From: Squalus acanthias
Lineage: Eukaryota
DNA: 64,000 nucleotides
NCBI GenBank assembly: GCA_030390025.1
Contig: CM059430.1
Location: 72,726,001-72,790,000 of the forward strand
Direction of reading: 5' to 3'
The position numbers and the translations under genes were made by a program. The notes under the pieces are model-generated. The model ran no database searches and was not told the origin of the DNA. It saw only the letters and a program-made list of their open reading frames with translations. Positions 12,235 through 45,803 of this stretch are shown here, in pieces (position 1 is the first letter of the stretch; the number at the start of each line of letters is the position of its first letter).

Positions 12235-15200
12235 TCTGAACACAAAAATCAGAAGTTAGTTTAGGTTATTGCCAGATACTTGATGACTATCATTAGTTCC
12301 TGATTTTGTTTCCAACCCAAATACATATATTTACCGTTTCACGGCGTGTTGCACCAATTCCAGTCGAAGTAATGCAAGAAGATAGGGCTAACTCCCCGTG
12401 GAGTTTTGAGGCGCGTTATAGGCAGATTACAAATTAAAGATGCTAATTTGTAGATCCTCAATTGAGCTCAAAAAACTGTTGCATATTAGTTACAAATGTC
12501 TAACCTTTCACCCGGCTTCGCCGCAACCACGAGCGAAGCCCTAGTTAAATGACGCATCGATCTATTATTCTGTCTTATTTTTCAGGCACGGAAATTAGGG
12601 AAATAACTCCCAGGTGGAATTCTGCGAACATAATTATAATTTTTCTACAAAGAACCAGAAGATGAACAATGTTTCCATAAATTTTAGACATACCATTGGT
12701 TACCCGCTGTAACTTCGACAGATGATCTGGCAATGTCGCTGAGAAATCAGGTAACGAGCTGAAAGTGGCCATATACCTGTTCATCTGGAGTTTCCCAGTA
12801 AGTGACGTGCCGTTTTCTCACTAAACCTGTTTAAGCGGCCGTGGCTTGCAATTCCTTGGGGTTGTCCTGCGGTCCTTTCCCAGCGTTGATGGGAAACACT
12901 GGGACCGCAATGAAAAATAGCTTAAACGTCTGAAATTGTCGTTTGCGACCTTACTCTGGCGATTTGTCCAAAATGTGTGGGTTAGGTTGATTTGGCTATG
13001 ATAAATTGACCCTTAGTGTTAGGGGGGATTAAATATGTGGGGTTATGGAGATAGGATGGGATATGTTAGGGGGAATTAAATACGTGGGGTTACGGGCGTA
13101 GGGTGGGATATGTGTACTGTGGGGATTAAAGCAGGGACAGGGTACTGGATTTGGATGATCAGCCATGATCGTATTGAATGGCGGAGCAGGCTCGACGGGC
13201 CGAATGGCCTACTCCTGCTCCTAGATTCTATGTTTCTATGTTTCTATTCCACCGATCCAATTTCGTTGAATTTCGGCGGGACATTGGTGGCATTCTGGAT
13301 CATTCAGGGCCTTGGATATTAAATGTTTCGCTAGTCACAATTTAGGGTAAATTTGTTGCTGAAGAATTGAATTTCGCCGTTTACTCCCGACATCCCGTAT
13401 AACTTTAGAGGTAGAGCAGAGGGATCTCGGGACACGACCTAAACCGATAAAACTTGCAATGCATACCAATTCGAAATGTTCCCACTACAGTTAAGGCGGG
13501 ATATTGGGTGAATCAGACAGAAACACTCCTCTTCCTCTGTTTGGGTATTCCTATGCATTTCTTCATCCATTTCTTGTAAAGGAAATTTTAAAATTTAATA
13601 CATCAGTCGACCGAATTGAGGGGATCCTCCTCATCCGCCGCCGTAACTTCGACGAAATCCCCCTTGCAAGCGGTTTATTGGGAGAACCTTGGGGGAAGAT
13701 TACCCGGACAAGCGGAAGGGTCCCACGGATATTGGCTCAGTTTCATTTTAGACAAGTCTACATTAAAATAATAATTGTTCAAATTATTAATGAAATCTTA
13801 CCATTCGAAACGAATTGTCTTATAGTAATCAACAATGATGATGACCAGCATCAGAATTAGGAAAATAGAAAATATAAATCGGGATATCAAACCAATTCGG
13901 GATAAATTATTAGAGCCTGCAAGATGTAAATAAAACAGAAGTACAATGTTATATATTCAACTGGGTATCGTCATAATAACATTGGCCCTGAAATTAAGGT
14001 GTCTTCGACGGCATACACTGAGCGTACGCCGTCGTAATCCTTCTGAATGGCCCTGCATTTTTCGGGATTCCGCATGCACCTGCGCATGCACGGAAACCCG
14101 GAACTTGCAATCTGTCAATGTACACTTTGACAGATCTACCGAACCAAAAGTTAAATCAGATTCACTGGTGCAGAGTTGGACTATTTGCCCATCATCTGCC
14201 CATCAATTGCCCACGAAACTCTTGTTCAGGTAAAAACAGGCGTTGGGTTTGCTTTCATCAGCATAAGGGTTATTATGAATCTTAAATTAATCATTTTGAA
14301 ATAAACAATGATGCACAAACACTTACAATTTGTTCATGCAAAAAGTTGACCCGGTTTAGTTGCCTTACTCTAAATATTGAGATACAATACGCACATGGGT
14401 GCTTTGCGCTTTAATAATTCTGGAGTAAAACTTCAGTCAAACTCCAAATGCCAAAATGTTTACTAACGTGTTATATTTTTTTAAAGAGTGTGCATTCAAT
14501 AAATAATTATTTTCAACACAGTCCGATCACAAGTCCATCTTCTATATCCAGAAGAGTGTGTAATTCAAATCTAAGTTACTGTGAAATCTGCTGGAACATT
14601 GGCTGATGCGTTGTCCTTAACGACGATCGAATCATTGTGAAGCGGCCGAGTTTGGGCAAACAAGATCCCAATAGAGCACTTCAAACATTTGTTTTCGTGA
14701 AATAAACCACCGATTCATTATCCCAGTAGTATTGACATTAAAACTAAAGCATGCTCCTTTCGAAATCGTTATAAAGGAAAGATAGGTTGACTAGCTCCCA
14801 ATAAATTGTACCATAGATCTAAAAATATTCATGCAAATTTAAGTTTCACCTGCAAGTCAATGAAGGGTGAAAAAAGTTTGATTCCGTATAGCGCCTTCGC
14901 CTTGAAGCGTCGTTCAAAGAGATGCCCAGAAATGTCTAAATTTCCATTCTTTGAATTAAACGGACGGAGGATCCATGCACCGCCTGTTCATAGTTTCTAG
15001 CCAGCATTTCCTGTCATCCCTGCTCGGCTCCAAACCGCCAGTCCGCCGTAAAAAACGGCCGAACGTGTTGGATGTATGCTGTCACTCACGAGATTGACGG
15101 GGACGAATGCGCCATTACAAAATAGGGCAAAGACTGCTTCATATTTTCAGTCCAATAATTTCATTTGATAGAGAGTTGTGAGAACTTACTTTACGATTAT

Positions 15201-18200: not shown

Positions 18201-21200
18201 GAAGGTGGATTGATTTTTAGAAATACGTCGTCAGATAATAGTGTTGGCTGGTGTCTGAACCCATGACCTGTGATTTTATGTTATAAGGAAAGGCGCTGGA
18301 ACAACTTAACATTTTAACTAAAATATGTTGCAGTTGCACTCTGTTGTATGTTTGACAATTTGTTTCGATTCTCTACTATCCTTCTATGTTCTCCTTATTT
18401 CCGCATTTTGATATGGATATTACGCCGTTTATTTTGACTTTATGCAACCTACACGCTCTGATATCCATTAAAGTCTCTCTGTTGCCTCAGTGATGTTTCA
18501 TAGCATCTAACAGTTTTCTTTAAGCACTTTATGGGCAGTATTAGTCCGTCTTTGCAACTAGATTGCATTGACATTCTAGTGATCTATCTCCTCCCTCTTC
18601 CCTCTCTGTTTTTTCAAACTTATAAGAGATCGGTTCATCTTTCAGTCTTCCCTTTTGATGAACGAATACCCACCGGAAAACCGTGAACGGTATTCTATCT
18701 CCACAGATGCTGACTGGCCTGTTGTGGAGTTACTCTAATTTTCATGTTTATTACGGATTGCCAGCTTTAGCCCTTTATGATTAGATTTTATTTTGTATCT
18801 TTAAGGTATGCGATTCTTCTGCAGCAGTCTATTGGCAAGGGTACTTTGAAATTAAAATAAAATAACAACGTGTTATTTATAGTAAAGAAGTTCAGACTGC
18901 GTCTGAAAGGTTTATTATTTATTCGGAGCTTAACCAGAATCTACGTTAAGTCTTACTCATAAAACATGCTCAATTGGGCCTGCGTACAGCTGGATATGAA
19001 GCTGGCAGATTGAGAGCAGAACTGGAATAACATTTGAAATTTCATTGACGAATAAGAGAGAAATGTTAACCGAACCGAGCAGTACAGTCGCTGTGGTTAT
19101 GTTTCCTGGAACAGTGAATTGAAAATAAATACCTGCGGGTAATCATTGCTCCAGCATCTTACCTGGGTTCGAATTTGACACCAAATGAACAGCTAATTTC
19201 GGAGTCTGGAGGGTGGGGTGAGATACCAAACAAGTGTAAGGGGTCCCTTTCTGGACTGGCTGTGTCTCTTGCAGAATACTGGAAGCTTCATATAGTCCCG
19301 CTGAGTTCAGCTGCTTTGTGGTTGTTATCCCGGTTACAACGTTGCTTCCATTTTTGTACCAGTTGAAGGTGATCGTCTCCGGGTAAAAGTCAACCGTTTC
19401 ACATACGAGAAGAAGATAAATATTTGAATTTCTGCTGAATATTTTGGATATAATAGTCGGGGGAGCTGGCGGAGCTATAGAGGGATGCAGAGAAAAGCAA
19501 AAAAACCCGACCTTTTAAATGTAGAAGATTATTTACTTTTAAAAAATTCAAATCAAATGAGAGGATTCAGAAACCGCATTTGCTTTTTGCATTTAATTGA
19601 ACTGAAAATAATACTATCGTACTTATTTGACGGTCATCTGCTACTTTCATAAATGAACAAGAGACAGCCTCATTTATAGAGTGTTCACTCGCGTCCCTCA
19701 CAAGCATCACAAAAATCTCACCGACAGGGAATTACCTTCAAGTGCAATAATCTTTGTAATGTTGACAAAAACAACGCCCGTGCTTCAACCGGTAATCCCA
19801 CAAATAGCAATGACAGATCATCTGGTTTTATTGGCACGTATTAACTTTGGGAATATACCAACAGAACTGCTTGCATTTATTCCAAAAATGCTGTGTGACC
19901 GTTCCTTCCCAGAAAGGAAAGCACATAGAATTGGTTGCTTCGCTGACCCCAAATAAGCCGTAATCATGCAATACTAAACTAAAGCGTCAGACTAGATTAA
20001 TTCCTTAAAACGTGCAATATAGCTGAATGCAAGTTCTGGAATGTGCACAGCAGTTCTCCGATTTCTCCCTCCCCCTTAACCAGAGATAGATTCGCACAAA
20101 CGGTGTTGACGCCGATATTACGCCGAATTCTGCCGGACAGATATTGGGAAATACTGAGGACGTGCAAGGAGCTACAGAAATGCATTTCATTATATCTTAT
20201 AATAATAATAAAGTTTTTATGTAGCAATCTTTGCGTTAGCTCCGGAATATTTATAAACCTATTTCTCAGCAACAAAAATTCGATATTGCGAGCTGCAATG
20301 TTTCAGTCACTGGACTGAGAGACGCCGTCGACTGAGAATCATCAAATTCGACCGGCTTTTGTGGCATCGCTTAATGACTCGTTATATTGGAGAACGGCTG
20401 GTGATCATTTCTGTATAAAATGACTTGCAGGGAATATTCTGACATCACTGCTTGGTATTAGTTCTGGAATTATATTAAGTCTTTATCGTCGATATTAGAG
20501 TTTCAAACGATCAAATGTTCAGCCTTAATCGTCGCGGGAATGTGCCCAATGTGGCACTTTTCAGAAACACACCTGTACAAAAATATGGACGGCCAAATAC
20601 ATTGTTTGTCCAGCTCATGATTAAAATGTGTAGGTTGAAATCATTTCATTTAGGCTTCTATTGTAAATATTGAGGATTAATATACAAGTCACAAAACACA
20701 AAGGATCCACGGTAATAGTTAAATAAGAAACAGATCACCCCACCGTGCTGATTAATATTTTCAGTTATTTGAATTATCTGTGCGAGAATTCCCTGCCTTG
20801 CCACCTACCGTGGACAACAATCGTTGATCCAGTTCCGTTTCTCATCCTGTTTCTCTGTTGTTTGACTCCGCAGTAATAAAGCCCAGCGTCCTGGAAACGG
20901 ATATCAAGGATCTGCAAGGAGCCCCGTCCTTTCCTCAAGAAATGTTGTTTCCTCTTGTCTGAGCTGGGTTGCAGAAATATACGTTCGCCGAGTTTCCACC
21001 AGATAACATTCACTTCTGAATTATCTGGAAAAGGAGGGAACGAACAAGCAAAGGTAATGTTTGCGCCGATCGTAACAATCTTGCGTTGGGGGCTTTGGGA
21101 CACTTGGAACACGGCATCGCCAAAAACTGTGGAAGAAAAATAAAAACATGCAGACATCAATTAAATATTTCAAACCTGACGGAAATGTGTGCTAGACAGA

Positions 21201-21315
21201 GGTAGATGGTCGGACCGGGATCGACAGAAACTGGATTTACAAGGCGATTACCGAAAATGCCAGTCAAGAAAATCCCCAGGATCACCATGCACCGAAGCAC
21301 AGCTCGAACAGACAT
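12235..21315 (-). CDS. Gene A: VJ-C1 IgSF type I membrane receptor, activating type (TM arginine, short tail), about 269-270 aa; NKp30/SIRP-like architecture
   Basis: Exons 21315-21252 (leader), 21126-20809 (V), 19474-19163 (C1) and 13916-13802 (TM) are all GT-AG, phase-consistent and stop-free. The terminal exon is uncertain: a split TG|A stop at 12235 (acceptor has a ctaac branch point), read-through W-stop at 13798, or exon 11635-11542. Confidence 0.85.
12966..13246 (+). mobile_element. HE1-like V-SINE, 5'-truncated
   Basis: Nearly identical to 53946-54289. It ends in a CR1/HER1-type tail gatcagccatgatcgtattgaatggcggagcaggctcg...(ctatgttt)n. Confidence 0.85.
13802..13916 (-). CDS. Gene A transmembrane exon GSNNLSRIGLISRFIFSIFLILMLVIIIVDYYKTIRFE
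   Basis: Acceptor tcttgcag, donor gtaaga, 115 nt, phase 1 to 2. A 22-residue hydrophobic stretch contains one Arg. Not present in the ORF track. Confidence 0.85.
13984..14340. mobile_element. Truncated Harbinger-like MITE
   Basis: Starts ggccctgaaatt and is collinear with the left halves of the copies at 39589 and 49668. Confidence 0.7.
15305..16047. mobile_element. Harbinger/Tourist-like MITE
   Basis: TIR ggcccagaaattgatctcgc / gcgggatcaattttcggccc with 3-bp TSD TAT on both sides. Confidence 0.85.
16372..16503. repeat. Short inverted-repeat element (mini-MITE)
   Basis: Imperfect terminal inverted repeats of about 38 bp (attggggaaaatttgactttggatgacagtgtaaat / atttacactatcgctcaaggttaaaattacctccaat). 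Confidence 0.55.
17290..18770 (+). mobile_element. Old, heavily decayed Penelope-like element in the C1-TM intron of gene A
   Basis: 17595-17680 aligns by eye with the Penelope RT at 3885-3980, and 18655-18750 aligns with the pLTR/hammerhead region at 5288-5380. Confidence 0.65.
19163..19474 (-). CDS. Gene A Ig C1-set exon
   Basis: 312 nt, phase 1/1. Reads APPAPPTIISKIFSRNSNIYLLLVCETVDFYPETITFNWYKNGSNVVTGITTTKQLNSAGLYEASSILQETQPVQKGTPYTCLVSHPTLQTPKLAVHLVSNSNP, with C1 hallmarks LVC, FYP, W and YTCxVxH. Missed by the ORF track. Confidence 0.93.
20809..21126 (-). CDS. Gene A Ig V-set exon with germline-joined J-like G strand
   Basis: 318 nt, phase 1/1, acceptor ttccacag, donor gtaggt. Contains VSQSP, B-strand Cys, WW, DAGLYYC and NGTGSTIVV. 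Confidence 0.95.
21252..21315 (-). CDS. Gene A signal peptide exon MSVRAVLRCMVILGIFLTGIF
   Basis: ATG, hydrophobic core and a phase 1 gtaatc donor 125 nt from the V exon. A second in-frame ATG lies at 21288. Confidence 0.85.
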
Positions 21316-21620
21316 ATTGAATAAAGTAAGTTATCATTTGCTGCCAATCAAAAAAAATCTTTTTTTTTTTAGAGAGGGCGGGTTTCCTCTAATCCTGTAT
21401 AAACTATGAATCAATGGCGTGCACACCACCCATTAACAGCAGCCGTGTAATGAGAGAAATGAAGAGATGAACAGAAACGTGTGGGTATCCCTGTGAACAT
21501 TGCATAGTTTGAAACATCACGCATAGTAGCTTTTAGGTGAAATAATACAAAGACCACACTGGTCACCGTTGTATCCGGTATATCGGTTGAAAGCACATTT
21601 GGCCTCAATAATTGACTTAC
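21316..21620 (-). promoter_or_regulatory. Putative proximal promoter/5'UTR of gene A
   Basis: This is the only unique sequence between the ATG and the CR1 tail. It contains CCAAT (about 21344), GC box GGGCGG (about 21376) next to a GGAA ETS core, and a RUNX-type TGTGGT (about 21553). These short motifs are weak evidence. Confidence 0.35.
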
Positions 21621-21917
21621 AAACATAGAAACATAGAAACATAGAAAATAGGTACAGGAGCAGACCATTCGGTCCTTCGAGCCCGCACCGCCATTCAATG
21701 CGTTCATGGCTGAACATGCTACCTCAGTACCCCATTCCTGCTTTCTCGCCATACCCCTTGATCCCCTTAGTTGTGAGTGTTATATCTAACTCCCTTTTGA
21801 ATATATTTAGCGAACTGGCCTCAACAACCTTCTGTGGAAGAGAATTCCATAGATTCACCACTCTCTGGGTGAAGAAGTTGCTCCTCAGCTCAGTCTTAAA
21901 TGGCTTCCCCTTAATCC

Positions 21918-24548: not shown

Positions 24549-24707
24549 CCTTTGTCCTTTTAGACTTATGATTTAGTATGGCCCTTTGTGTTTCTTGCCT
24601 TTGTTTACTCGGCCTTCCCCTATTGTTTCTCACCCTTCTAACATTTGTTTCTGACTGCATATTACTTCCCCCTGTTTCGCTACATAGGTTCCCATTCCCC
24701 TGCCATA

Positions 24708-25463
24708 TTAGTTTAAATCCTCCCGAACTGCTTTAGCAAATATTACCCCGAGGACATCGGTTCCAGTCCTGCCCAAGTGCAGACCGTCCCTTTTGTACAG
24801 GTCCCACTTCCCCCAGAACTAGTTCCAATGCCTCAGGAATTTGAATCCCTCCCTCCTGCAACACTGCTCAAGCCACATATTCAATCTCACTATCCTGTTC
24901 TCGCTATTCTGATTAGCACGTGACCCTGGTAGCAATCCAGAGATTACTACCTTAGAGGTCCCACTTTTTAATTTAGCTCCTAGCTCCCTAAATTCTGCTT
25001 GTAGGACCTCTTCCCGCTTTTTACCTATATCGTTGGTACCTACATGCACCACGACAGCTGGCTGTTCACCCTCCCTCTTCAGAATGTTCTGCAGCCGCTC
25101 CGAGACATCCTTGACCCTTGCACCAGGGAGGCAACATACCATCCTGGAATCTTGGTTGCGGCCACAGAAACTCCTGTCTATTCCCCTTACAATTGAGTCC
25201 CCTGTCACTATAGCACTCTTTTTCCCGCCCTGCTGTGCAGCAGAGCCAGCCATGGTGCCATGAACCTGGCTGCTGGTGCCTTCCCCTGGTAGGCCATCTC
25301 CCCCAACAGTATCCAAAGCGGCATACCTGTTTTGGAGGGAGATGACCACAGGGGACTCCTGCACTACCTTCCTGATATTGCCCGGCTTCTTGGTCACCCA
25401 TTCACTGTCTGTCCTAGCCTTTAGATGCGGTGTGGACAACTCACTAAATGAGCGATTCACCAA
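24708..25463 (-). pseudogene. CR1 ORF1, SGNH/GDSL esterase domain, 5'-truncated with one in-frame TAG at 24819-24821
   Basis: Motifs VTGDSIVRG, CLPGA and VHVGTNDIG. Past the TAG the frame continues FWGKWDLYKRDGLHL...VREDLN*. Confidence 0.9.
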
Positions 25464-26099
25464 CGGGTTTCTGTATCACACAGGTGACTAAAGTAATTGC
25501 TTTGAACAAAGAAAGTGCCGAGAAGCTGACACTTAATACAACAATAGATTGCAATTGCTGCTTTCGCCGATATCTCGTTCTTTCCAAGGTGGCCAATTTG
25601 TTCCACTTCAAATGCCAATGCAATTTTATCTTGTTCAGCTTTTCAAACCGATAATTATATGTTGCCCATCTCCACCTAAAGGCGTATACAGGTATTGAGG
25701 AAACTTTAATTATTTAATGTCAGCTCTTTCATTCACATGTGAATTAGGATGGAAGCAGCAGTCCGTAATATCATGAACAGTGCAAATTGCCCCAGAAAAT
25801 ACAAACAGGATGCGCTCGGTTTCCGAATGGAGATGTGTATTAATATTAATCCGTTAAAAAGTCTCCCCTACCCTACACTCCCAACAACGAATGTATAAAT
25901 ACCTTATAACTTAGCACGTACACTACACGGTTTTGTTTTACACTTCACGGCAGATAATCTTTTACTACTACGCACATTCAGTAGACAATTAATATTATGC
26001 TCTTTTTAGGCCATAAAGATGTTTTACTCCACTTAAAGCAGGCTTTGACCAGTGTCTTGGCAAATCGAAGAAATAGGGCGGTGGATAGGGCTTTCAACT

Positions 26100-32190: not shown

Positions 32191-32559
32191 AAAAGGGTAT
32201 GAGGCCTTTCATCTCTGTTTGGTGAACTATTTGAAACAAATGTGCAGTTGTAAAACATGAGGTAAGTTTGCATTCGGGATGAGGAGAATGATCAACCAAA
32301 AGGGTGTCAGACAGATGCCATGTTTTACTTAGTTAGAAAGAAGGAAAGCAAGCTGCATTGGAGACCTTGGGGCGTGGACAGGCTTGGAGAAGCCATCTTC
32401 ACGATTTGTCTTGAAATCTCCACACTGTAAGTTTTGGACTCAGGGCTAACGTTCGCTACTCTATATGGTTGGTTATGGTGTTTAAGAGTAATATTTTATT
32501 GGTTAGTGTGTTTACGATTAATGTTTTGTCGGTAATAAATGAAGTAACATATCACACAT

Positions 32560-33330: not shown

Positions 33331-33389
33331 CCAGCAAATATCTAGCGCAGAAATTAAAGCTCTAACAACCTCCTCCCAGTTATCATTAC

Positions 33390-36372: not shown

Positions 36373-38537
36373 ACTATAGTGAACAGTACCTTCATGTTAC
36401 ATGTTGACGACAATATTCTGCTCGCTATAGCTTTATTAGGACGGTCAAAATTAGGACCGCCAGAATCACTCAGCTCCAAACCGTATTCAGAGAATATGGG
36501 AGCTGAACAGCATTGGAGAATAGGCAGCAGCTGCCTGAACATTAACGCATCATTGCAATGCGTGTGGCATCAAGGAGTCTTCAGAATCTGGAAGTCATTT
36601 GGGACAAGTGGAACACCCTTCAGTTGGTGCTCAATCTTCACAGCCGTCTTACAGAAGAATCCTCAGTCTAACTATCTTCAGCTGCTCCATCAATGACCTC
36701 CACTCCACCATAAATTCACGAGCGTGGCTGTTAACTGATAATTATAGTGTTCAGCTCCAGTGGCAACTCCTTAGATAAAGAATCAGCCTACAGCAGAAGT
36801 AACTTTCAAACAGGAATTGGATATACACTTGAAAACGAAAAACATTGCGGGGCTATGGCGAAAGAGCAGGCGAGTGAAACTATTTCGATAGCTCTTTCAA
36901 AGAGCCGCCACAGGCACGATGGGCCAAATTACCTCTTGCTGTGCTGTATGATTCTATCCTAATTCTATGATACCAGCCCACAACAGGACATTTCCAACAT
37001 TCAATGCGAGGTAAAATTCGTGCCACATAAGTGCCAAGCAATGGCCAGCTCATAGACCAAGCAAAATCACATCAATTTCAACAATGCTTCAACACACCAT
37101 CTATATCCTGGGCGTTAATCATTGGTTAGCAACTTAACCGACCCTGCCATATGAACAACCGTAACTACTGAAGCAGCTTTGCAATGAATGGTTTATATAT
37201 CAACCTGTGTGCCTCTTTATGCCATCCTCACTGCTCAAGTGTGGAATTTGGAACCACAGGCACTATTCGCCCGGATGGGAGCTTCTGAAAGCTCAAGTAT
37301 CTCCACACTATCCACAACACCAACAGTTTGTTTGATTCGTATCCATTTCACAGGAATCCATGGGTGCAGTACGTACTATGTACATGATGCATTGAAACAA
37401 TCAATTCATCAACAACTGACCCAGAGTTGATAATGGAAAAAAAACAAATGTGGAAAGTTTTGACAAGCATTGGTCCAAAGTAAACTTGTTCCTCCCAAGC
37501 ACACTACACTTACCAGTTGTCATGTCTTAAATTACTCATATGGGGACGTTTTTGGATTAATCTATTTTAAGGTAAATGGGGTTTGATGCAATTTAGTGGT
37601 TACTTTTATAAAGCCAACAGACCACCTTGCCTTATCTCGTTCTTGTCTTACCATTAATATCTGAGTAATATAGACGTTTGGTGTGGATTTTGTAGGAAAG
37701 AACGCAGCACACAAGGGTGTCGCTATCAGAAAGTGTTGCCCACATTATTTTGCTAACGATTTTTAATCGCCTTATTGATGCCATTTACAATAAGGGCCAA
37801 AGGAATGTCATACACCAGCAAAGTAATGCTAATCCCAAGTAAATTGTGCCAAGACAATGCCACACATTGTGAAGAGTGAAAAAAACTCAAGATTGACGGC
37901 AAAAAACACTGAAGAGCCAGAATATCATTTTAATGATTGAAGAATGCAGCCTTGTTAACCATTAGGCAATTGAGTATAAAAGAAAGAAATAACATTCATC
38001 CTGACTTTTTAAAGAAGTCAACTGTATTAATGTTATGGCTGGATAACGATTTATAAAATAAGTCGCACCAATTGGTGCATTTGTCTGTTGAAGTATGTTG
38101 ACCTGGAAAATAATGGCGGCTGAAGCATAACAAATATACATACAGGGGCAAGTGACCAGGCTAACGCGAGCATTCTGCACGACGACAGTGGTCTCTGCAT
38201 AGGTTAAAACATTAGGTGATTTTTGTTCTGGTGTAGATGACCTCGGCTGCTACTCTTTGGGTTTTCAAGTGTAACTGAACGTAATCTGAACTCTTGTCCT
38301 GAAGTTTAGGCTGTTCTATTTTCCTGGAGCCAGACAATTCCAGCGCAGCGTATGTCAGATTGTTATCTGTTGTCGCTTGCTTTGTCTATAAAGCGAGTGT
38401 TGGAGAATATCATTATTACATAGCCAATGCCAGTTTGTTCATTAGTAAAAGGAGCCATTACATTTAAGAAAGTCAACAGGTAATGCAAACTAATTTATTT
38501 CCTCCGCTACCATGGGTGACCTGTGTTTATTTTTTTC

Positions 38538-38648
38538 TCAGCCTACCTGGGCGTACACAGTCCTCTCCTCTTTATCGTTAGCGCTTGCAGTTTTCATTGA
38601 ATTTGTCAAATCTAATGCAGCGTAAAGCACCATCTCATTTGTTGATCC
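38538..38648 (-). CDS. Gene B terminal cytoplasmic exon GSTNEMVLYAALDLTNSMKTASANDKEERTVYAQVG*
   Basis: Acceptor ctatgcag, phase 0. Exact ITIM (V-x-Y-x-x-L) and ITSM (T-x-Y-x-x-V) consensus matches. Confidence 0.88.
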   Translation of the reverse strand, partial: GSTNEMVLYAALDLTNSMKTASANDKEERTVYAQVG

Positions 38649-41600
38649 CTGCATAGATCACAAAGTAATGCATATTATATTGGTTACTCATTATCTTAGT
38701 GACACTGCAGTGTATGGATTACACTTTGAACCGAACTCTCGGTAATACTAAAACCAGAGCTGTAAAGTGAAACATTAAAATAAATGCAGATGGAGCTTGT
38801 GTTATCTCTCAATAATTTTATACTATAGCATTAGGAAAATATATTGTATTTTACTCTCTCAATGTGGGCAATAGTCATGTTTTAAATAATGGTTATTACA
38901 CAAGTTACTGCTTAGTAAGCCCTATGCGTGAAAGCACAAAGGCCTAATTATACCTTCATTACTTGAAGTGTTTTGCCATTACATGTACACGCATGTTTGA
39001 AAATTACATTTTATGTTGTTGTTACTGATTCCATCAGCATTATATATTTTGGAAATAATTTCAACAATTTATGAAAAAAATCAGTAAATACCTTTAGGAG
39101 ATACATTGAATTTAGAATTGACCTGCAGAAATCTGAAATAAATATTTACTCTAACTTTTAAAGGGTTAATGCTTTACCTTAAGCAGCGAAGTGATGTATT
39201 TCAGGCCAGCGGATAAATTGCATCTATGAAAGTATTTCATGCTTAATCTCACAGCCAATTTCTATTTGCATAAAAAATGGATGAGAAGAACCTACCAGAA
39301 CTTCTGGATGTGATGGTTGCTCCAAGGAATCCCCTGTTTCTGGCAATGAATGGACTTGAAAATGTGAACATTAATTATTTGCTTAAATCGTTCTCAATGA
39401 TTCCAAAACCATTTCATGTAGGCTTAATACACAGTCAAACTTTATGTTCAGTAACACAATCAAGAATTTTTGGATATCTCTATTTGTTCAAGCTTTACTG
39501 TCAAATTAACATCTCCAGATTTTGTTAAATTATTGAGTACTACGCGAGTCAACTTCCACGAGGTCAAGAGGCTTCCTGCTTTGACCATGGCCCTGAAATT
39601 GCGGTGTCTGTGACGGCATACTCTCAGAGTACAACATTGTGTTCCTTTTGAAATGCCCCGTAAGTTCCGGATTTCCTCATGTGCTTGGGTAAAATCTGGA
39701 ACTTGAGGGCTGTCAATGTACAGGTTGACAGGCCATATGCGGGAGACCCGAAAAAGCAATCGCTGACGCAGAGTTCAGCTGTTTGCCCAGCGACTGGACA
39801 GCAATTTCCCACGTAGATCTTACAGTTGATGCAAGCAGGCTTAGGGCCTGTTTGTATCAGCGTAAAGAGATCTCTAAGGCTTAAATTAAACATTTTCCTA
39901 TCCAAAATTATGCACATACACTATATTAATGAGTTTATGCAAATTTTGGAATGTGTTAAAAATTTAATTACGTCTAAAATGATCAAAAAATATTTGTTTA
40001 TCGAGGTTGGTGTAATGAAGGTAGATATGAATAAAATTCCAACTCTGTACATTGTATAACTATTAGATTTGGGAATTCCATTGCATATCATTAGGGGATT
40101 CCTTCGTAAATGATTGGAATGGAATTCTGTTTATGAATTGGCGGACTGGAAACACGTGACCCCAGATACGTTTCCGATCCGCCTGTATCCTGGGATCCGT
40201 GGATCATTACGCTGCCCTCCACCTCGAGGCCTGAGACCACAACTTTTCGCAGCTTGGGCACCAGGAGGTACTTTCGTAATTGTTTCATGGTTTGGAGGCA
40301 CACTCCGGAAGCTATCCTCTGGCGGTAATTTCCAGCCCCACTTATTAGCTTAGACGCTAAACCTTAGCAGGAACTTGACGGGAAAACGCATCACATTAGA
40401 CCCTGCACTTAACTCACTTCTACAAAGGTAATGCAGCAGCAGAAAGAGGTCAGAGAATTTTAGATCCAAAACGAGCAACTTTCTCCTACCCACTCCAGAG
40501 AGGTGAAAGGCAACACACCACTTTATTGCTGCGGGACAGATTATTAAACTCAGCACATTGGTTCTAGTTCCCCATCTCCCTGGCTCCTATCTTCAACAGC
40601 ACAACATGTCATCCATTTGCAAGAGAGAAGAAATAACTTCTCATTTATGTAGCGCGTTCTAGGACCTTAAAACATCCCAATGCGCTTCTCAAGCGAAACG
40701 TACTTTTGAATTTTAATCACTGTTGTAATGTAAGGAAACGCGGTGGCTGATTGAGCACAGAAATATCCCACATACAGTACTGCGATGAATAAGCAATTAA
40801 ATTGTTTTACCGATGTAAATTGGGAATAAATGTTTTGCAGTACACCGAGAGACCATCCAGCCCTCCTTAAATAGCGCAAAGAGATATTTTACATCCACCT
40901 CAGCGCGAAGACGGAGGCTTTTTTTAAGTTTTCATCCGAAAGCTCTCCCTCAGTACTGTGATGGGGTGGCGGCCTAGATTATGTGCTTAACACTCCGACC
41001 TCTGATTATCAAGTGAGAATGCTACTACTGATCCAAACCTTACATTAACTTACTTCATCCCTACCCTCACTTTATCAAGGAAATACTTAAGGACAGAATG
41101 AAACGGGACAATTTCATACCTTTACATATTATTAATGGACATCGCTTCAGAATGATTATCAAGAGCAAAATAATTACGATTCCACCTCCAGCGGATCCAA
41201 AGACCTTTATGAACCACAGTTTGTTGTCACCTCCTGTAAAATGAATGTCAAAAATAAAATTAGAAGTTGTATATTGTGAGAAAGTGTTCTGCAGTCCCAC
41301 ATTTCAATGCCGCCAACCATTCTTTTGAACAATGATTTCAATTTTCGAGAGTACCACAGCATAAAGCGACGGTTAAACATTTAATTGACCGTCTTATTTT
41401 TCATTTTCCATTACAAATTCGTTATGATTACTAAACATTTAAAGAAAATGATACAATTGCATTTCAAAAATGGAGCACGATTTAACCTTCACCCCTGAGT
41501 AATAGTTAAGACGATTATCCTTGGACTTTAGTTTTTATACCACATGTTAACTAAGAATTAGATATGAAAGTTGATTCCTAGTTTAGTCACCAGTGTTTGG

Positions 41601-44600
41601 TGAACAAGTTGTGCTGTTTCGACAATCCAACAGCTTCAGGTTTGCTTTTCCTGAAACCAGCATTTTATTTCCAGAACTGTTTAATTTGAAGTCAAATTCT
41701 CAAACTACCATGGCGTGATTAATGGTCCAGGCGTCTGGATTACATAACAATTATACTACAATACATCCGCTCTCTAATAAAAAAAAGGTCAGTACAAAGA
41801 CCCGTTAGCCAACAGAACTTAAAAAATCTGCTTAATCCATATTTTTGTTCATTTAAAGAGTGATAACCCATCAATGTGCCTTTAAAGGATTGTTGTCAAA
41901 ATTGCGCAAATGCCAAATACGGTCCATAATCTTTGGTATCCGTCTTGGGTCAAATGTTCGTTGCATTTGTTATAATTAGATTTTTACCTCCAGTACTGGT
42001 TGAAATGAATCGGAAGTCAGTTGCCGTTTGGACGGTGAGATGAAATGCCTGGCAGGTATAAATAGTCCCGCTCTTGACAGGCTGTGACTCTTCCAAAAAG
42101 CTGGAAACTTCATACAGACCTTTTTCATTTAGCTGTATTTCGGCGTTTATCCCGGTCTCAACTTTCAAACCATCCTTGTACCAAGTAATATTGATATCAT
42201 TTGGGTAAAATTCAGCAGTTTTACACACAAGAATCAAAGAAGCAGATGCATTACGATCAGCCTCATTACAGTCAATACGCAGTGGGGTTGGGGGAACTGT
42301 GGAACAAGATATAGAAGAGATTAGAAGTGATTCTATTTTCTACCACATCAAAGCCAATGTGACATTAATACTTTCCAAACATTAAATGGCACGTTCATTT
42401 ATCGAAATGTTGGGTGGATTTTCAACTTGCGGAAAACAGCCGATGTTGATCGACAACTTGGCATCGAGTTGAAAATCTATCCCATTAATTAAAGGATTAC
42501 AATTTCTACGGAGAAGTTGGTGAGCTAAACAATAATACCATCGAAATCAATGCTAGAAAGTTTATAGATGGAAGACTTAAAGGTGTGGATGGTTTTGAGA
42601 TTATTGCAACAAATAAATATCTCAGTATAACTCATAATTAAGAGCAGGTATAAAGGGATTCGATGGATAATATGGTTTACAACACTTCGCATTTTACAGG
42701 GCTAAGCTTTTAATTGAAAAAACACATCATTTCACGATCAAATAGTTTTAATGTTGTTTATAAAATCATATTGAACACCATTCACCTTAACTGGAATATT
42801 TTAGAAAGTTGAAAGACGGTTTAATAACTGTCGAGACAGTTTTACTGAGTTAGAGACTCTGTTGAAGTAATTATTGTGAAGAGTGTTGGAAAGGTTAATG
42901 TAAAATACAGATAATACATAGTTTAAGAACGGCAGTAAGTGAAGAACCATAGCTGGAGGAAACGGAAAGCAGAATAAAATAGATAAATGGAAAATTTACT
43001 GAGAACTCGCCGGAGAGTGACCCGAAGTTTAAACCAGAGTGCGGCAGAGAAAGACGTAACGGTTCGAAACCAACAATTAACTTGCCATCTAAGCGAAGAC
43101 TTATTCGTCATATTCTCATTCAAGCGGCAGATTTACCAGTGAAATTCAAACAGTCGTGCTGGTTAAAATACACTGTACTCAATTATATACAGCAAATTAT
43201 GATACATCGTGATAGTGAATGATGTTTATTGCGCTCTGCTTGTTGATTTAGCTTGTCTACGCTAATTTATAATAATTCATTCGTAATGATATTAATGCTT
43301 CATCAATGTTGAACCTCATGTTCAACACTAGCTGCAAATTAGTCGATGCAATTAAGTAAATTAATCAGTGGCTAACCTCTTTCACGTTCAATTCTTTGTC
43401 GCGTTATTAATCATGTGTTTAAATGTCTCTTTACCGAACGTTATATTACATTCCTGTTCGTTCCCAAACGTTAATTGAACCGAAATGTGTATAAATAAAA
43501 CAAGGTATTGAATAATAATTTCATTGTACATTCCAAAATGCATAAAGCAAACGCTTGGATGCCCCAAACATAAAAACAATTAAAAAAAATCTTGCACCGT
43601 GTTTGTTTCGTTCGCTTTAAAAAAATTAGTGGAATAGCTTCAGGTACAAATTACCGTAGATGCCAAGCTTTGTCCCAGTTCCATTTCCCATCCGACTACT
43701 CGGATGTTTCACTCCGCAGTAATAAACTCCGGAGTCCGCGGCGCTGACATTCAGGAGCTGAAGAGAGGCCTCTCCTTTCTTCAAAGGAGAAAATCGTTTT
43801 CTGCTGTCATTAACTGACTGTAGAAACTCTATGTCTCCCATTTTCCACCAGTAAACAGTCACATCGGAATTATCTTGGAAAAGAGGGAACGCGCAATAGA
43901 AAGTAATGTTTCCACCTGCGATCAAGTTAACGTTTTCAGGGACTTGGGACACTCTGATATCAGCATCTGAAACAGCTGTGAGGAAATAAATGCAAACAAT
44001 AATTAGATATATCGCGCTCAAACGGCTTGCTGACAATAATCATCGACTTCTGACAGTAGGGTAGGTTTGCTGATGAATAAATTAAATGTTTGTCAACGAT
44101 ATCTGATACTGCAAGCGCTGAATATAACGAGTTCATTTTAAACGATGAGATCTGTCGGCGCTGCTCTGTATTTAATGTGCCTAGCTACCACATTTCTATT
44201 CTTAAAACTAACCTGGTGTGAAGCGCAGACCACGCCAGTACATTTTGAATTGCACATGTCTTCAGGAACAGACAATGATCAGACAATGAACACATCAACT
44301 GAGACATGGTTGATGCGACGCAGGGACTAAGATCTTGACATAACTCACGACGAAAGGACTTACATTGGACTGTGTTTCTTCTTTTAAGTTCAATTGAGGT
44401 GGTAATACATCCTAACACCACATTCACTTCGACAATTGTCTCGTGGCACTGGCCATGGACCTTTCATCAACCTTGCAATATAATCCGCATGTTTTCTATT
44501 GCTCAACCACCTTGCGAAAAGGACCCGGCATCATTCAAAGATGCAGTGCCCCTATCCAAGTGCAGCACACTACATTCGTCTAGATTAAATTATATCTACC

Positions 44601-45803
44601 AGATTCGGTTAATTCCTCTATTTAATCCAGTTTTGTCTGCAATCTTATTTTATTTTTTCCACAGTCTTTAGATCCGCAGATATGTTCGTGCAATCTACGC
44701 ACTTGCAGATAACATCCCCATGCCTTTACCCAAATAATTGATAAATAATGCAATGGTCCTAACGATTAATAACTGTCTTGTGTGACCTTTAATAGAGCAG
44801 TTTCCTTGTCCAACCCAACCAAAAACCTGCATGCAAATCCCACAATACTCAACCTACCTTAGTAGCCTTTTGAGTAGGACTGTATTAACCTCTTTTTTAA
44901 AAGACTAGATATACAATATCAATATGACTGCATCATCTACCAACTTAGTAAATTCTTGGAAAAAAGTGCAACGAAGTTGGTGAGACACGAACTTCTGTTG
45001 CATAAACCATGTCTGGATTCCCTAATAAACTCAAACTTTCGAATTGATAGTGCAGCGCATCTCTAATAATTGTAAAGTTTCGAGGTTCTCACTTCGACCA
45101 TTTTTGAAATTTTGGGAAGTCGTGGCCCCCTCACGGGTCCATGGGCAGCATCACAGATAACTATACAATATAACTACTAAATTTATACACAAATGGCCGA
45201 ATTAGCACAGGCCACATTTGCTGTAACACACTCGGGAGAATGTCTTCAAGGTCAGCACCCCGATCTATTTTACGAGCAAAAACTGCAACAAAGACTACCT
45301 CTGCATCCAGTTCAACAGGTTTACTTTTAACATCAGCCTCATGTCGTCGTCTTGGTAACCCAGCATCTTTGAATGTAGTGAAGGCAGGTGCAAAGTAACT
45401 TTTAATCTTTTGCCATATCCTGGCACTCCGCCTGAACCTGCCCAGAGGACCGTTCAATGTTCTAGCACTTTCCTTGGTGAGCCTGTGATGTTCAACATAG
45501 TTGAAAAATACCACCCGATACATTCTTCTCCATCCGTGTCTTTCTCGCTAATCATATTGATTCTTACATTTATTCTAATGCTTGAAACATGGGTCTTGTA
45601 TAAATTGGACCTCTGAGCGTAAAAGTGACCAGCAATATCCAGAAGTAACTCCAACACATACCACATACAACAGAGTTCAGATTTTCAGTGTCTGCTGTAT
45701 CTTGCTTTTGACATATTAAAACATGACATTAATAGAAAGGAAAACTCATGGATATACCTGTATAAGCATTCGCAAAGATCAATATCCAGTGAAACACAAT
45801 CAT
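38538..45803 (-). CDS. Gene B: VJ-C1 IgSF type I membrane receptor, inhibitory type (ITIM + ITSM), about 314 aa
   Basis: Exons 45803-45758 (leader), 43975-43655 (V), 42296-41988 (C1), 41233-41120 (TM), 39339-39296 (cyt1) and 38648-38538 (cyt2 with stop) are all GT-AG and phase-consistent, totalling 945 nt without internal stops. AATAAA follows the stop. Confidence 0.88.
39296..39339 (-). CDS. Gene B first cytoplasmic exon (ETGDSLEQPSHPEVL), candidate
   Basis: 44 nt with attgccag / gtaggt boundaries. It supplies the phase 1 to 0 change needed between the TM and ITIM exons. Confidence 0.6.
39589..40338. mobile_element. Harbinger-like MITE in a gene B intron
   Basis: Imperfect TIR ggccctgaaattgcgg / gcggtaatttccagccc. 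Collinear with 49668-50437. Confidence 0.75.
40631..41032 (-). mobile_element. Degenerate DeuSINE
   Basis: Collinear with 31705-32190. Confidence 0.75.
41120..41233 (-). CDS. Gene B transmembrane exon GGDNKLWFIKVFGSAGGGIVIILLLIIILKRCPLIICK
   Basis: 114 nt, phase 1/1, ttttacag / gtatga. Hydrophobic helix followed by a KR stop-transfer signal. Confidence 0.9.
41988..42296 (-). CDS. Gene B Ig C1-set exon
   Basis: 309 nt, phase 1/1. Reads VPPTPLRIDCNEADRNASASLILVCKTAEFYPNDINITWYKDG...GLYEVSSFLEESQPVKSGTIYTCQAFHLT. Confidence 0.93.
42411..42484. repeat. 74-bp inverted-repeat mini element
   Basis: tgggtggattttcaact ... agttgaaaatctatccca. Confidence 0.55.
43655..43975 (-). CDS. Gene B Ig V-set exon with germline-joined J-like G strand
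   Basis: 321 nt, phase 1/1. Contains VSQVP, NITFYC, WWK, DSGVYYC and GNGTGTKLGIY. Confidence 0.95.
45758..45803 (-). CDS. Gene B signal peptide exon MIVFHWILIFANAYT
   Basis: 46 nt with ATG, hydrophobic core and a CAG|gtatat phase 1 donor, joining in frame to AVSDADIRVSQ. Confidence 0.75.

What the first reader, a model, noticed from the sequence alone, without database searches (positions are those of the whole stretch)
12235..45803. Paired activating/inhibitory receptors built on a non-rearranging VJ-C1 (antigen-receptor-like) scaffold
Seen: two tandem, co-oriented, apparently intact paralogues share leader-V-C1-TM exon structure and intron phases. The V domains are about half identical (my manual count is 51 of 104), yet the TM and tail exons are unrelated and of opposite polarity. 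Gene A has a TM Arg and almost no tail; gene B has an uncharged TM core with ITIM and ITSM. Established: this split defines paired receptor families (KIR, LILR/PIR, SIRP alpha/beta, CD300, teleost NITR), and C1-set domains are mostly limited to Ig/TCR, MHC, B2M, tapasin, SIRP and B7-H6-like proteins. Inference: this is part of a cartilaginous-fish paired NK/myeloid receptor cluster. Automated pipelines would probably label it NKp30-, SIRP- or Ig light chain-like, and it may be functionally undescribed. I cannot confirm novelty without a search.
Basis: partly seen in the sequence, partly recalled or inferred. Interest (0 to 1): 0.9.

Follow-up and report, generated by a model that had tools for sequence, protein, structure and literature searches.

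The report
Shark activating/inhibitory VJ-C1 receptor genes
Two neighbouring shark genes encode antibody-like surface receptors, one built to switch immune cells on and one to switch them off, and they belong to a large family found only in sharks, rays and chimaeras that no searchable paper describes.

Summary
On the minus strand lie two intact genes with leader, V (with a J-like end), C1 and TM exons, all Ig exons in phase 1. The V domains are 51 of 105 identical. The TM and tail exons are unrelated.

- **Gene A** (21315-13802) ends in a TM exon with an Arg and a tail of about 9 residues.
- **Gene B** (45803-38212) has 7 coding exons, collinear with Heptranchias perlo XP_067853494.1. It has an uncharged TM and three ITIM-consensus tyrosines.

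Both genes belong to a multigene family seen only in cartilaginous fish in my searches. RefSeq names its members SIRP-alpha-like, Ig lambda-like, NCR3LG1-like, tapasin-related-like or CD276.

Arg-TM and ITIM forms are interleaved on the V and C1 trees. The family is therefore paired, but A and B are not each other's closest partners. The nearest outside V domains are amphibian NCR3 (36%) and reptile multi-V ITIM receptors.

No RNA evidence was available, and function is inferred. First-stage notes report similar genes on other pieces of this genome. My verdict is a new variant of a known kind.

The parts
45758..45803 (-). Gene B leader exon (ATG at 45803, MIVFHWILIFANAYT, phase-1 donor)
   Evidence: Read. 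The leader and the sequence just upstream align to the H. perlo isoform P0151 (tblastn 45922-45806, 67% over 39 aa).
43655..43975 (-). Gene B V exon with J-like end (GNGTGTKLGIY), phase 1-1, not split by an RSS
   Evidence: Pfam V-set 4.1e-12. Family V profile 141 bits. 67-68% identical to P0008.
41988..42296 (-). Gene B C1 exon, phase 1-1
   Evidence: Pfam C1-set 7e-12. Family C1 profile 132 bits. 72-75% identical to P0008.
41120..41233 (-). Gene B stalk and TM exon (VFGSAGGGIVIILLLIIIL, uncharged core), phase 1-1
   Evidence: Read. It is the only six-frame piece of the window that matches the ITIM-type TM profile (E 2.6e-12). 54% identical to P0008.
39296..39339 (-).
   Evidence: Best of 150 AG..GT candidates of length 3n+2. 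Same length as, and 7 of 15 residues shared with (my own count by eye, no call), the P0008 segment GTRDVMERPQHPKVP. It resolves the phase clash between the TM exon and the exon at 38648.
38538..38648 (-). Gene B cytoplasmic exon 2 (VLYAAL ITIM; RTVYAQ), phase 0-0
Evidence: 68% identical to P0008. Tail profile E 1.9e-10.
38212..38385 (-). Gene B last coding exon (LTYAAL, SDYVQL, VIYTRT) with stop TAA at 38214-38212
   Evidence: 60% identical to the C-terminus of P0008. Tail profile E 4.2e-15.
21252..21315 (-). Gene A leader exon (MSVRAVLRCMVILGIFLTGIF, phase-1 donor)
   Evidence: Read. Weak match to the leader of P0023 (48% over 23 aa, E 0.15).
20809..21126 (-). Gene A V exon with J-like end (RNGTGSTIVVH), phase 1-1
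   Evidence: Pfam V-set 2.7e-9. Family V profile 134 bits. 64% identical to P0034.
19163..19474 (-). Gene A C1 exon, phase 1-1
   Evidence: Pfam C1-set 2.5e-13. Family C1 profile 139 bits. 69% identical to P0034.
13798..13916 (-). Gene A stalk and TM exon with Arg (LISRFIFSIFLILMLVIIIVDYYKTIRFE). The donor is at 13801; read-through gives W then TAA at 13800-13798.
   Evidence: Read. It is the only six-frame piece of the window that matches the Arg-TM profile built from other sharks (E 5e-8, 29.8 bits). It aligns with the TM of P0009 and P0012.
12019..12235 (-). Possible 3' exon of gene A behind the acceptor at 12235 (would give TG+A = stop); unverified
   Evidence: The acceptor ttgtgttcag was read. 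There is no homologue or RNA support.
21918..25475 (-). LINE between the two genes (not part of either gene)
   Evidence: ORF2 of 876 aa carries Exo_endo_phos 2.2e-13 and RVT_1 6.6e-33. ORF1 carries a GDSL-like domain at 3.7e-8.

Best explanation
The region holds two intact, tandem members of a multigene family specific to cartilaginous fish. They are type I membrane receptors whose ectodomain is a germline-joined VJ domain followed by one C1 domain.

Gene B is the inhibitory type. It has an uncharged TM and a tail of about 100 residues with three ITIM-consensus tyrosines and two further conserved tyrosines. Once phosphorylated, these would recruit SH2 phosphatases and damp activation.

Gene A is the activating type. 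Its TM carries an Arg near the outer leaflet, with a conserved acidic residue at the inner end and almost no tail. It would signal by pairing, through the Arg, with an acidic TM residue of an ITAM adaptor.

What is shown: the exon structure, family membership, the two TM types, and their interleaving on the ectodomain trees.

What is inferred: phosphatase and adaptor recruitment, the cell type and the ligands.

The same Arg-TM exon type sits on V lineages that are not one clade. TM and tail modules have therefore been exchanged or sorted repeatedly within the cluster, as in KIR, LILR and SIRP. A and B themselves diverged long ago and probably see different ligands.
For: Structure:
- The Pfam V-set and C1-set matches of both genes are above the gathering scores.
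- Canonical splice sites and phases were read.
- All 7 exons of gene B are collinear with H. perlo XP_067853494.1, a 377-aa protein. My summed exon lengths give 372 codons.

Family:
- phmmer of the gene B V exon against 1.84 billion representatives gave 494 hits at E<=0.001.
- Every V-C1-TM hit whose source I looked up is a shark, ray or chimaera protein.
- Profiles built without the window score its exons 132-141 bits. The best outside V domain scores 60 bits or less.

TM types:
- 102 stored proteins have a family V domain.
- The regex typing gave 38 ITIM-type, 13 Arg-TM, 12 with a third 'PWWIY' TM, 15 with a TM only and 24 truncated. I later moved P0166 by hand from the ITIM type to the Arg-TM type.
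- In 13 of those 14 Arg-TM proteins the position holds R; one has Q.
- In all six frames of the window, the Arg-TM profile hits only 13801-13956. The ITIM-TM and tail profiles hit only gene B's exons.

Interleaving:
- At least 6 type changes among 41 typed rows of the V tree.
- At least 7 type changes among 37 typed rows of the C1 tree.
- A single clade of all 11 Arg-TM V domains is rejected (lnL difference 245.5, p-AU 0.001).
Against: - There is no transcript evidence. No RNA run held the region, and the three runs laid covered only repeats plus one 170-nt contig, 91% alike, on the last exon.
- The join of gene A's C1 exon to the TM exon 5.2 kb away rests on phase, order and family analogy alone.
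- A and B are only 49% (V) and about 47% (C1) identical, far less than classical pairs.
- Gene A's closest ectodomain relatives in Mustelus and Scyliorhinus carry ITIM tails.
- A 2014 survey (PMC4016189, passages read) found no FcR-gamma in sharks, so the adaptor is unknown.
- The AU group was named after I had seen the tree.
- The trees are 'quick' trees on about 105 columns.
- TM typing used my own regular expressions, with one row (P0166) relabelled by hand.
Confidence: 0.72

Rival explanations
1. The family is the cartilaginous-fish form of NKp30 (NCR3). These would be NKp30 co-orthologues that keep a C1 domain lost in bony vertebrates, and gene A would be the true NKp30-like activating receptor.
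For: - The best named V hits outside cartilaginous fish are amphibian proteins that UniProt or GenBank call NCR3 (P0105, P0076).
- The gene B V is 36% identical to X. tropicalis NCR3 P0182 over 111 columns (E 5e-14 pairwise).
- The G strand shares a GNGT sequon with those proteins.
- X. tropicalis NCR3 has HR at the start of its TM, like the shark Arg-TM forms.
- Some RefSeq isoforms skip the C1 exon and are V-TM like NKp30 (P0080 against P0069).
Against: - Xenopus NCR3 V domains score only 37-38 bits on the family V profile, against 80-141 bits within the family. Reptile multi-V ITIM receptors score higher, up to 60 bits.
- No NKp30 chain is among the 60 best of 2357 PDB matches to the gene B V, where antibody V and PD-L1 do appear.
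- The gene A V is only 21-26% identical to the Pelobates NKp30-like protein.
- NKp30 has no C1 domain and is single-copy in most species (recalled, from no call).
- MHC linkage could not be tested.
Confidence: 0.25
2. They are B7H6-like (NCR3LG1) or other B7-type ligands rather than receptors.
For: - B7H6 is V-C1-TM. RefSeq names 3 of the family proteins whose names I saw 'NCR3 ligand 1-like' (P0009, P0048, P0172) and one 'CD276 homolog'.
- The Atlas search lists B7 and butyrophilin clusters among the look-alikes of P0009.
Against: - A charged-TM, tailless form beside multi-ITIM forms on interleaved ectodomains is the signature of signalling receptors, not of B7 ligands.
- No B7H6 chain appears in the 60 best PDB matches, although antibodies saturate those lists.
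- I had no B7H6 sequence from any tool, so there was no direct comparison.
Confidence: 0.08
3. Gene A is not an activating receptor. Its V-C1 exons would be a decaying or secreted copy, and the Arg-TM exon 5.2 kb downstream would be unused or belong to another transcript.
For: - There is no RNA evidence.
- The intron is long.
- Gene A's closest relatives P0034 and P0152 have ITIM tails.
- A LINE sits about 600 bp upstream of the ATG.
Against: - All four exons are open with canonical sites and matching phase 1.
- The invariant Cys and Trp residues of the family are kept.
- The window holds exactly one Arg-TM exon. It lies in the right order and strand behind gene A's C1, with no ITIM-type TM or tail relic near gene A.
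- 14 proteins of other species, most of them RefSeq models, join the same exon type to V-C1.
Confidence: 0.1
4. They are chains of a dimeric, antigen-receptor-like complex (TCR- or UrIg-like), in which the C1 domains pair and the TM charge serves to assemble with CD3-like chains.
For: - C1 domains usually pair.
- UrIg2 (9dmx) is the second-best PDB match to the family profile (2.6e-38).
- The VJ exon and split leader follow the antigen-receptor plan.
- First-stage notes place relatives inside Ig light-chain arrays (untested).
Against: - There is no conserved membrane-proximal Cys for an interchain bond (read by eye).
- There is a single C1, against several in UrIg and nine in UrIg2 (PMC12227049, passage read).
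- ITIM tails are foreign to antigen-receptor chains.
Confidence: 0.05

Closest known systems
SIRP family (SIRP-alpha, -beta, -gamma) of mammals and birds
   Same: - The V domain has a J-like G strand and is followed by C1-set domains.
- The family has paired logic: ITIM tails against a charged TM with a short tail.
- SIRP-alpha (2wng) and SIRP-gamma (4i2x) are among the best non-antibody PDB matches to the family profile, aligned across V and C1 (8.4e-34 and 2.1e-29).
- RefSeq most often names the relatives 'SIRP-alpha-like'.
   Different: - Here there is one C1, not two.
- The TM charge is an Arg near the outer end, where SIRP-beta has a Lys (the Lys is recalled).
- No orthology is shown.
- The family was found only in cartilaginous fish.
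- CD47 binding is untested.
NKp30 (NCR3), including the expanded amphibian NCR3 genes
   Same: - VJ-type V domain with a GNGT sequon in the G strand.
- Arg at the start of the TM in the activating form.
- Amphibian NCR3 is the best named V relative outside cartilaginous fish (36% identity).
   Different: - NKp30 has no C1 domain.
- Similarity to the family profile is modest (37-38 bits).
- Human NKp30 chains are not among the 60 best PDB matches.
- Most members here are inhibitory.
UrIg and UrIg2 (non-rearranging shark VJ-C1 genes; PMC12227049 abstract, section 13 and passages; PMC10751288 passages)
   Same: - Germline-joined VJ exon, split leader and C1 domains.
- Elasmobranch genes.
- UrIg2 is the second-best PDB match.
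   Different: - UrIg2 has a VJ domain plus nine C1 domains and forms disulfide-linked dimers with an Fc-like part.
- It is described as a single gene linked to the antigen-receptor complex.
- Here there is one C1, many genes, and ITIM or Arg-TM signalling ends.
Teleost NITR and mammalian KIR, LILR/PIR, CD300 and PILR paired receptors
   Same: - Clustered multigene families.
- Activating (charged TM) and inhibitory (ITIM) members share ectodomain types.
- TM and tail modules are exchanged between lineages.
   Different: - Those families use V, I or C2 domains, not V plus C1 (recalled).
- None is reported in sharks. PMC4016189 (passages read) found no C2-only LRC receptors or FcRL genes in sharks.
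B7H6 (NCR3LG1)
   Same: V-C1-TM architecture. Three relatives carry this RefSeq name.
   Different: B7H6 is a ligand without a charged-TM counterpart. I made no direct sequence comparison, because no tool gave me a B7H6 sequence.

Membership tests
Paired activating/inhibitory IgSF receptor family (the kind) | Related ectodomains carried by members with ITIM tails and by members with a charged TM and a short tail | tested here: met
   Gene B has VLYAAL, LTYAAL and SDYVQL. Gene A has an Arg in its TM and a tail of about 9 residues. Across the family, typed 38 proteins as ITIM-type and 13 as Arg-TM (14 after I relabelled P0166 by hand).
Paired activating/inhibitory IgSF receptor family (the kind) | The activating and inhibitory partners have near-identical ectodomains (usually over 80%) | tested here: not met
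   A against B: V 51 of 105 identical, C1 about 47%. The closest opposite-type pairs on the V tree are also distant (P0012 and P0015 are 0.29 apart by path).
Paired activating/inhibitory IgSF receptor family (the kind) | Adaptor association through the TM charge, and SHP-1/2 recruitment to the ITIMs | not testable with these tools
   This needs biochemistry.
NKp30 (NCR3) | A single VJ-type V domain with no C domain | tested here: not met
   Both genes have a C1-set exon. V-only forms exist only as C1-skipping isoforms of relatives.
NKp30 (NCR3) | The V domain is closest to NCR3 among all V families | tested here: inconclusive
   Amphibian NCR3 is among the best outside hits. However, reptile multi-V receptors score higher, and human NKp30 is not in the best 60 PDB matches.
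NKp30 (NCR3) | Arg in the TM, with CD3-zeta or FcR-gamma association | tested here: inconclusive
   The Arg is present in gene A. Association is not testable here.
NKp30 (NCR3) | MHC linkage | not testable with these tools
SIRP | V followed by two C1 domains | tested here: not met
   Each gene has one C1 exon, and the window holds no further C1.
SIRP | Sequence kinship across V and C1 | tested here: inconclusive
   The profile matches 2wng at 8.4e-34 across V and C1. Multi-domain antibody chains and UrIg2 score as well or better.
UrIg/UrIg2 | A VJ domain plus several C1 domains that form a disulfide-linked, Fc-like dimer | tested here: not met
   There is one C1 and no conserved stalk Cys.
Rearranging Ig/TCR | V and J are separate segments flanked by RSS | tested here: not met
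   The J-like strand (GNGTGTKLGIY, RNGTGSTIVVH) runs on within the V exon up to the phase-1 donor.
B7H6 (NCR3LG1) | Sequence orthology to NCR3LG1 and a ligand role | not tested
   No tool gave me a B7H6 sequence. The only hints are RefSeq names for 3 relatives.
Cartilaginous-fish VJ-C1 family (unnamed) | V and C1 exons score as members on profiles built from other species | tested here: met
   V scores 141 and 134 bits and C1 scores 132 and 139 bits, against 60 bits or less for outside V domains. The placements are starred (A 100, both genes within a clade at 97; A and B each 98).

The most novel reading that the evidence does not exclude
Sharks were reported in 2014 to lack KIR/LILR-type, FcR-like and FcR-gamma genes. 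On this reading they run their germline activating/inhibitory recognition on a lineage-specific, NKp30-related VJ-C1 multigene family whose Arg-TM and ITIM modules are repeatedly shuffled between ectodomain lineages. The family would preserve the ancestral VJ-C1 receptor form. NKp30 would derive from it by loss of C1, and perhaps B7H6 too. It would stand beside UrIg as a non-rearranging relative of the antigen-receptor precursor. First-stage notes say some members lie inside Ig light-chain arrays.
Probability: 0.3. Interest if true: 0.8.

Novelty: new variant of a known kind. Interest (0 to 1): 0.6.

Why it matters
Paired receptors such as KIR, LILR, SIRP and NITR are central to innate self/non-self discrimination. 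What fills that role in the oldest jawed vertebrates is poorly known.

A large family confined to cartilaginous fish, built on the antigen-receptor-like VJ-C1 plan, would be a concrete candidate. It has interchangeable activating and inhibitory ends and scattered misleading database names.

It also bears on two questions: how NKp30, B7H6 and SIRP relate to each other, and which non-rearranging VJ-C1 genes surrounded the gene that the RAG transposon invaded.

The exact exon models given here make reporter, adaptor and ligand experiments possible.

Tried and rejected
I looked for extra or alternative TM and tail exons. Profile scans of all six frames found no ITIM-type TM or tail relic near gene A and no Arg-TM exon near gene B. 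A weak tblastn extension just past gene A's C1 donor (19142-19062) was rejected: it is too close to the donor and too weak.

2. **Direct join of gene B's TM exon to 38648 or 38385.** Rejected on phase. No phase-1 acceptor exists at 38648, and a phase-1 join at 38385 gives a stop after 7 codons.

3. **The search for homologous proteins with the gene B V ORF.** It found nothing. This says little, because the tool sees only proteins of 75-240 aa.

4. **The search for homologous proteins with alignment A1.** It returned only 22 hits among 8000 word-sharing candidates. This is too insensitive to reach bony-vertebrate relatives.

5. **The Atlas search of P0009.** It gave only generic V-C1 families.

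6. **RNA evidence.** None was listed. The three runs with the same species label laid only on repeats.

7. **Papers.**
   - Searches found no description of this family.
   - Flajnik 2012, Ohta & Flajnik 2015 and Flajnik 2023 are not held.
   - I opened no supplements. The gene tables of PMC10751288 and the figures of PMC12227049 may list NKp30- or B7H6-like genes of sharks.

8. **Trees with NCR3LG1, SIRP, IgL or TCR references.**

9. **Joined coding sequence.** I never built or searched one. All searches were exon by exon.

Full report
**What is there**

The window has no N. In 12-46 kb only the minus strand carries Ig-like open pieces.

Pfam scores the four pieces as follows, each above the family's gathering score:

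| Piece | Domain | E-value |
|---|---|---|
| 44039-43629 | V-set | 4.1e-12 |
| 21160-20777 | V-set | 2.7e-9 |
| 42339-41953 | C1-set | 7e-12 |
| 19514-19146 | C1-set | 2.5e-13 |

A tblastn of these pieces against the whole window finds just two V and two C1 exons. The rest of the window is transposon remains.

**Gene A (downstream)**

Reading the sequence and a coordinate script give four exons:

- Leader 21315-21252: MSVRAVLRCMVILGIFLTGIF, phase-1 donor.
- V 21126-20809.
- C1 19474-19163.
- Stalk and TM exon 13916-13802: ...LISRFIFSIFLILMLVIIIVDYYKTIRFE.

All acceptors end in AG and all donors begin with GT. The leader, V and C1 donors and the V, C1 and TM acceptors are in phase 1; the TM exon's own donor (GAA TG|gt) is phase 2.

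The protein ends after the TM either by read-through (W, then TAA) or, if spliced to the acceptor at 12235, by TG+A. Either way the tail has about 9 residues. The splice to 12235 has no support beyond the site itself.

**Gene B (upstream)**

| Exon | Coordinates | Notes |
|---|---|---|
| Leader | 45803-45758 | phase-1 donor |
| V | 43975-43655 | phase 1-1 |
| C1 | 42296-41988 | phase 1-1 |
| TM | 41233-41120 | uncharged core VFGSAGGGIVIILLLIIIL |
| cyt1 | 39339-39296 | 44 nt, phase 1 to 0 |
| cyt2 | 38648-38538 | phase 0-0 |
| cyt3 | 38385-38215 | then TAA |

The first four were read.

The TM donor is phase 1, but the ITIM exon at 38648-38538 starts and ends in phase 0. An exon of length 3n+2 must therefore lie between them.

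Among 150 AG..GT candidates, the best match to the corresponding stretch of the closest homologue is 39339-39296. It is 44 nt, the same length as in the homologue, and reads ETGDSLEQPSHPEVL against GTRDVMERPQHPKVP.

The exon at 38648-38538 then joins in phase 0 to 38385-38215, which runs to TAA.

All seven exons are collinear with P0008, which is Heptranchias perlo XP_067853494.1 (377 aa). My exon lengths sum to 372 codons. Identities:

- V: 65%
- C1: 72%
- TM: 54%
- Tail exons: 68% and 60%

The leader and its upstream flank also align to the longer H. perlo isoform (45922-45806, 67%).

I did not build or search the joined coding sequence. Every search was made exon by exon.

- The V domains are 51 of 105 identical.
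- The C1 domains are about 47% identical, and the TM exons are unrelated.
- At DNA level only the V exons still align: 71% over 262 nt. The only other match is a shared interspersed repeat. The duplication is therefore old.
- Gene B's tail holds three ITIM-consensus motifs (VLYAAL, LTYAAL, SDYVQL) and two other tyrosines (TVYAQ|T, VIYTRT).
In P0008, and in five other relatives whose sequences I read (P0039, P0043, P0062, P0069, P0080), the spliced form reads TVYAQTK.

**The family**

phmmer of the gene B V exon against 1.84 billion representative proteins gave 494 hits at E<=0.001.

Besides giant multi-Ig proteins that score by summing many domains, the best hits are proteins of 220-420 aa. 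I looked up 30 proteins, and names also came. Every hit with a V-C1 build is from a shark, ray or chimaera:

- Heptranchias, Carcharodon, Cetorhinus, Heterodontus, Mustelus
- Scyliorhinus (2 species), Chiloscyllium (2 species), Hemiscyllium, Rhincodon
- Mobula, Hemitrygon, Hypanus
- Callorhinchus

Their RefSeq names disagree with one another: SIRP-alpha-like, Ig lambda-1 light chain-like, NCR3 ligand 1-like, tapasin-related-like, CD276 homolog, TCR beta-like, or uncharacterized.

Profiles of the V and C1 parts, built from 30 of these proteins without the window (A1), give the scores below:

| Sequence scored | Bits |
|---|---|
| Window V exons | 141 and 134 |
| Window C1 exons | 132 and 139 |
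| Family members (V) | 80-141 |
| Best outside V domains (lizard, snake and turtle multi-V ITIM receptors; a Pelobates protein) | 43-60 |
| Xenopus NCR3 | 37-38 |

**Signalling ends across the family**

Of the 102 stored proteins with a family V domain, my pattern rules typed them as follows:

- 38 ITIM-type.
- 13 Arg-TM.
- 12 with a third 'PWWIY' TM and a basic tail.
- 15 with a TM only.
- 24 truncated.

I later relabelled P0166 by hand from ITIM-type to Arg-TM type. The counts include isoforms.

The Arg-TM segment is conserved across species, with the pattern R-F/L-I/V-L-...-I-I-V-D/E-H. One protein has Q in place of R. Gene A's TM fits the pattern.

In a scan of every six-frame piece of the window:

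- The Arg-TM profile hits only 13801-13956 (E 5e-8).
- The ITIM-type TM profile hits only 41070-41303 (E 2.6e-12).
- The tail profile hits only the two gene B tail exons (4.2e-15 and 1.9e-10).

**Trees**

The V tree has 93 rows and the C1 tree has 75 rows. They agree on three points:

- Gene A groups with P0034 (Mustelus, ITIM tail) and P0023/P0152 (S. torazame, ITIM tail), with support 100 and 98.
- Gene B groups with P0008 on the C1 tree (with P0014, support 98). On the V tree the two lie unresolved in a weakly supported 8-row group (support 82, drawn open) that also holds the Arg-TM group around P0009 (white shark, basking shark, catsharks, bamboo shark).
- Both window genes lie in one starred V clade of 18 rows that mixes both signalling types.

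The fewest changes of type are 6 among 41 typed V rows and 7 among 37 typed C1 rows.

Forcing the 11 Arg-TM V domains into one clade costs 245.5 log-likelihood units (p-AU 0.001).

Caveats: I named the group after seeing the tree; these are quick trees on about 105 columns; and the typing rests on my own rules.

The pattern is that of a paired-receptor family in which TM and tail modules move between ectodomain lineages. It also shows that A and B are not each other's partners.

**Relation to known families**

By sequence against solved structures, the family profile matches:

- UrIg2 (9dmx): 2.6e-38.
- SIRP-alpha (2wng): 8.4e-34, across V and C1.
- SIRP-gamma (4i2x): 2.1e-29.

These sit among multi-domain antibody chains. 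For the gene B V alone, NKp30 and B7H6 chains are not in the best 60 of 2357 matches.

The gene B V is 36% identical to X. tropicalis NCR3 and shares its GNGT sequon in the J-like strand. The gene A V is 21-26% identical to a Pelobates NKp30-like protein.

The V domain is therefore NKp30- or PRARP-like in type, but membership in NKp30 is not shown. The presence of a C1 fails NKp30's architecture, and having one C1 rather than two fails SIRP's.

UrIg and UrIg2 share the non-rearranging VJ-C1 plan. However, they have several C1 domains, form Fc-like dimers, and are described as single genes. For this I read the abstract, section 13 and passages of PMC12227049, and passages of PMC10751288.

**Mechanism**

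- *Shown:* the architecture, the motifs and the family pattern.
- *Inferred, inhibitory form:* ITIMs recruit SH2 phosphatases.
- *Inferred, activating form:* a TM Arg pairs with an Asp of an ITAM adaptor, as for NKp46 (PMC6514059, passage read) and for NKp30 (recalled).

The adaptor is open. A 2014 survey found no FcR-gamma, FcRL or C2-only LRC receptors in sharks (PMC4016189, passages read). That makes a shark-specific paired family more interesting.

**Evidence that I could not get**

- No RNA run holds the stretch.
- The three runs laid cover only repeats, plus one 170-nt contig, 91% alike, on the last exon.
I therefore have no fold comparison and no synteny in other sharks.
- Flajnik et al. 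2012 on shark NKp30 and B7H6 is not held. It may already include members of this family.

**Earlier notes of the scan**

Notes on this window had already marked the Arg-TM exon and the exon at 38648-38538. The second gave me the lead to that exon.

Other notes report further VJ-C1-TM genes just beyond the window's end and on other pieces of this genome, some inside Ig light-chain arrays. I could not test those.

**Verdict**

It is not shown for this gene pair, for the cell type or for function.

This is a new variant of a known kind: paired IgSF receptors on a VJ-C1 scaffold. The family is present in databases under inconsistent automatic names, and I did not find it described in the papers I could search.

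Noticed in passing
window 21918-25475 (minus strand): An apparently intact LINE lies about 600 bp upstream of gene A's start codon. ORF2 is 876 aa and open, with endonuclease and reverse-transcriptase domains. ORF1 has a GDSL-esterase-like domain. Degraded RT fragments on the plus strand fill 26.4-36 kb.
   Followed up: partly
window 13983-14342 and 39588-39943; also 40538-40736: The same interspersed repeat (67% alike) lies just upstream of gene A's TM exon and inside gene B's TM-to-cyt1 intron. The bin 40538-40736 has a summed contig depth of about 5000 in all three runs, so it is a very high-copy repeat.
   Followed up: no
window 38648-38538 and 38385-38215: The two tail exons of gene B look like an internal duplication. 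Each has an ITIM (VLYAAL, LTYAAL) followed 23 residues later by a second tyrosine (TVYAQ, SDYVQ). The tblastn match between them is weak (E 0.07-0.09). Relatives carry 1 to 4 such modules.
   Followed up: partly
stored proteins P0080/P0069 and P0063/P0070: RefSeq models of other sharks include isoforms that skip the C1 exon but keep the same V, TM and tail. This gives an NKp30-like V-TM build by splicing alone.
   Followed up: no
stored proteins P0032, P0037, P0048, P0155-P0157, P0169, P0171, P0173, P0176-P0178: A third subfamily has a 'PWWIY' TM start and long basic tails without canonical ITIMs. It forms its own part of the V tree and looks like one or two orthologous genes per species. Its relation to B7H6 is untested.
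   Followed up: no
window 38195-38364: One 170-nt contig of run X2 lies on gene B's last exon with 15 differences (91% alike). It is probably a paralogous copy. It spans no junction and may be DNA.
   Followed up: no
window about 42270 (gene B C1 exon, residues RIDCNE): Gene B has an extra Cys at the start of its C1 domain. It is absent from H. perlo P0008 (HIAANE) and from gene A. It could be an unpaired or interchain Cys.
   Followed up: no
other pieces of this genome (first-stage notes): First-stage notes describe VJ-C1-TM-ITIM genes embedded in Ig light-chain arrays elsewhere in this genome. If these are the same family, the linkage to IgL clusters would bear on antigen-receptor origins.
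   Followed up: no
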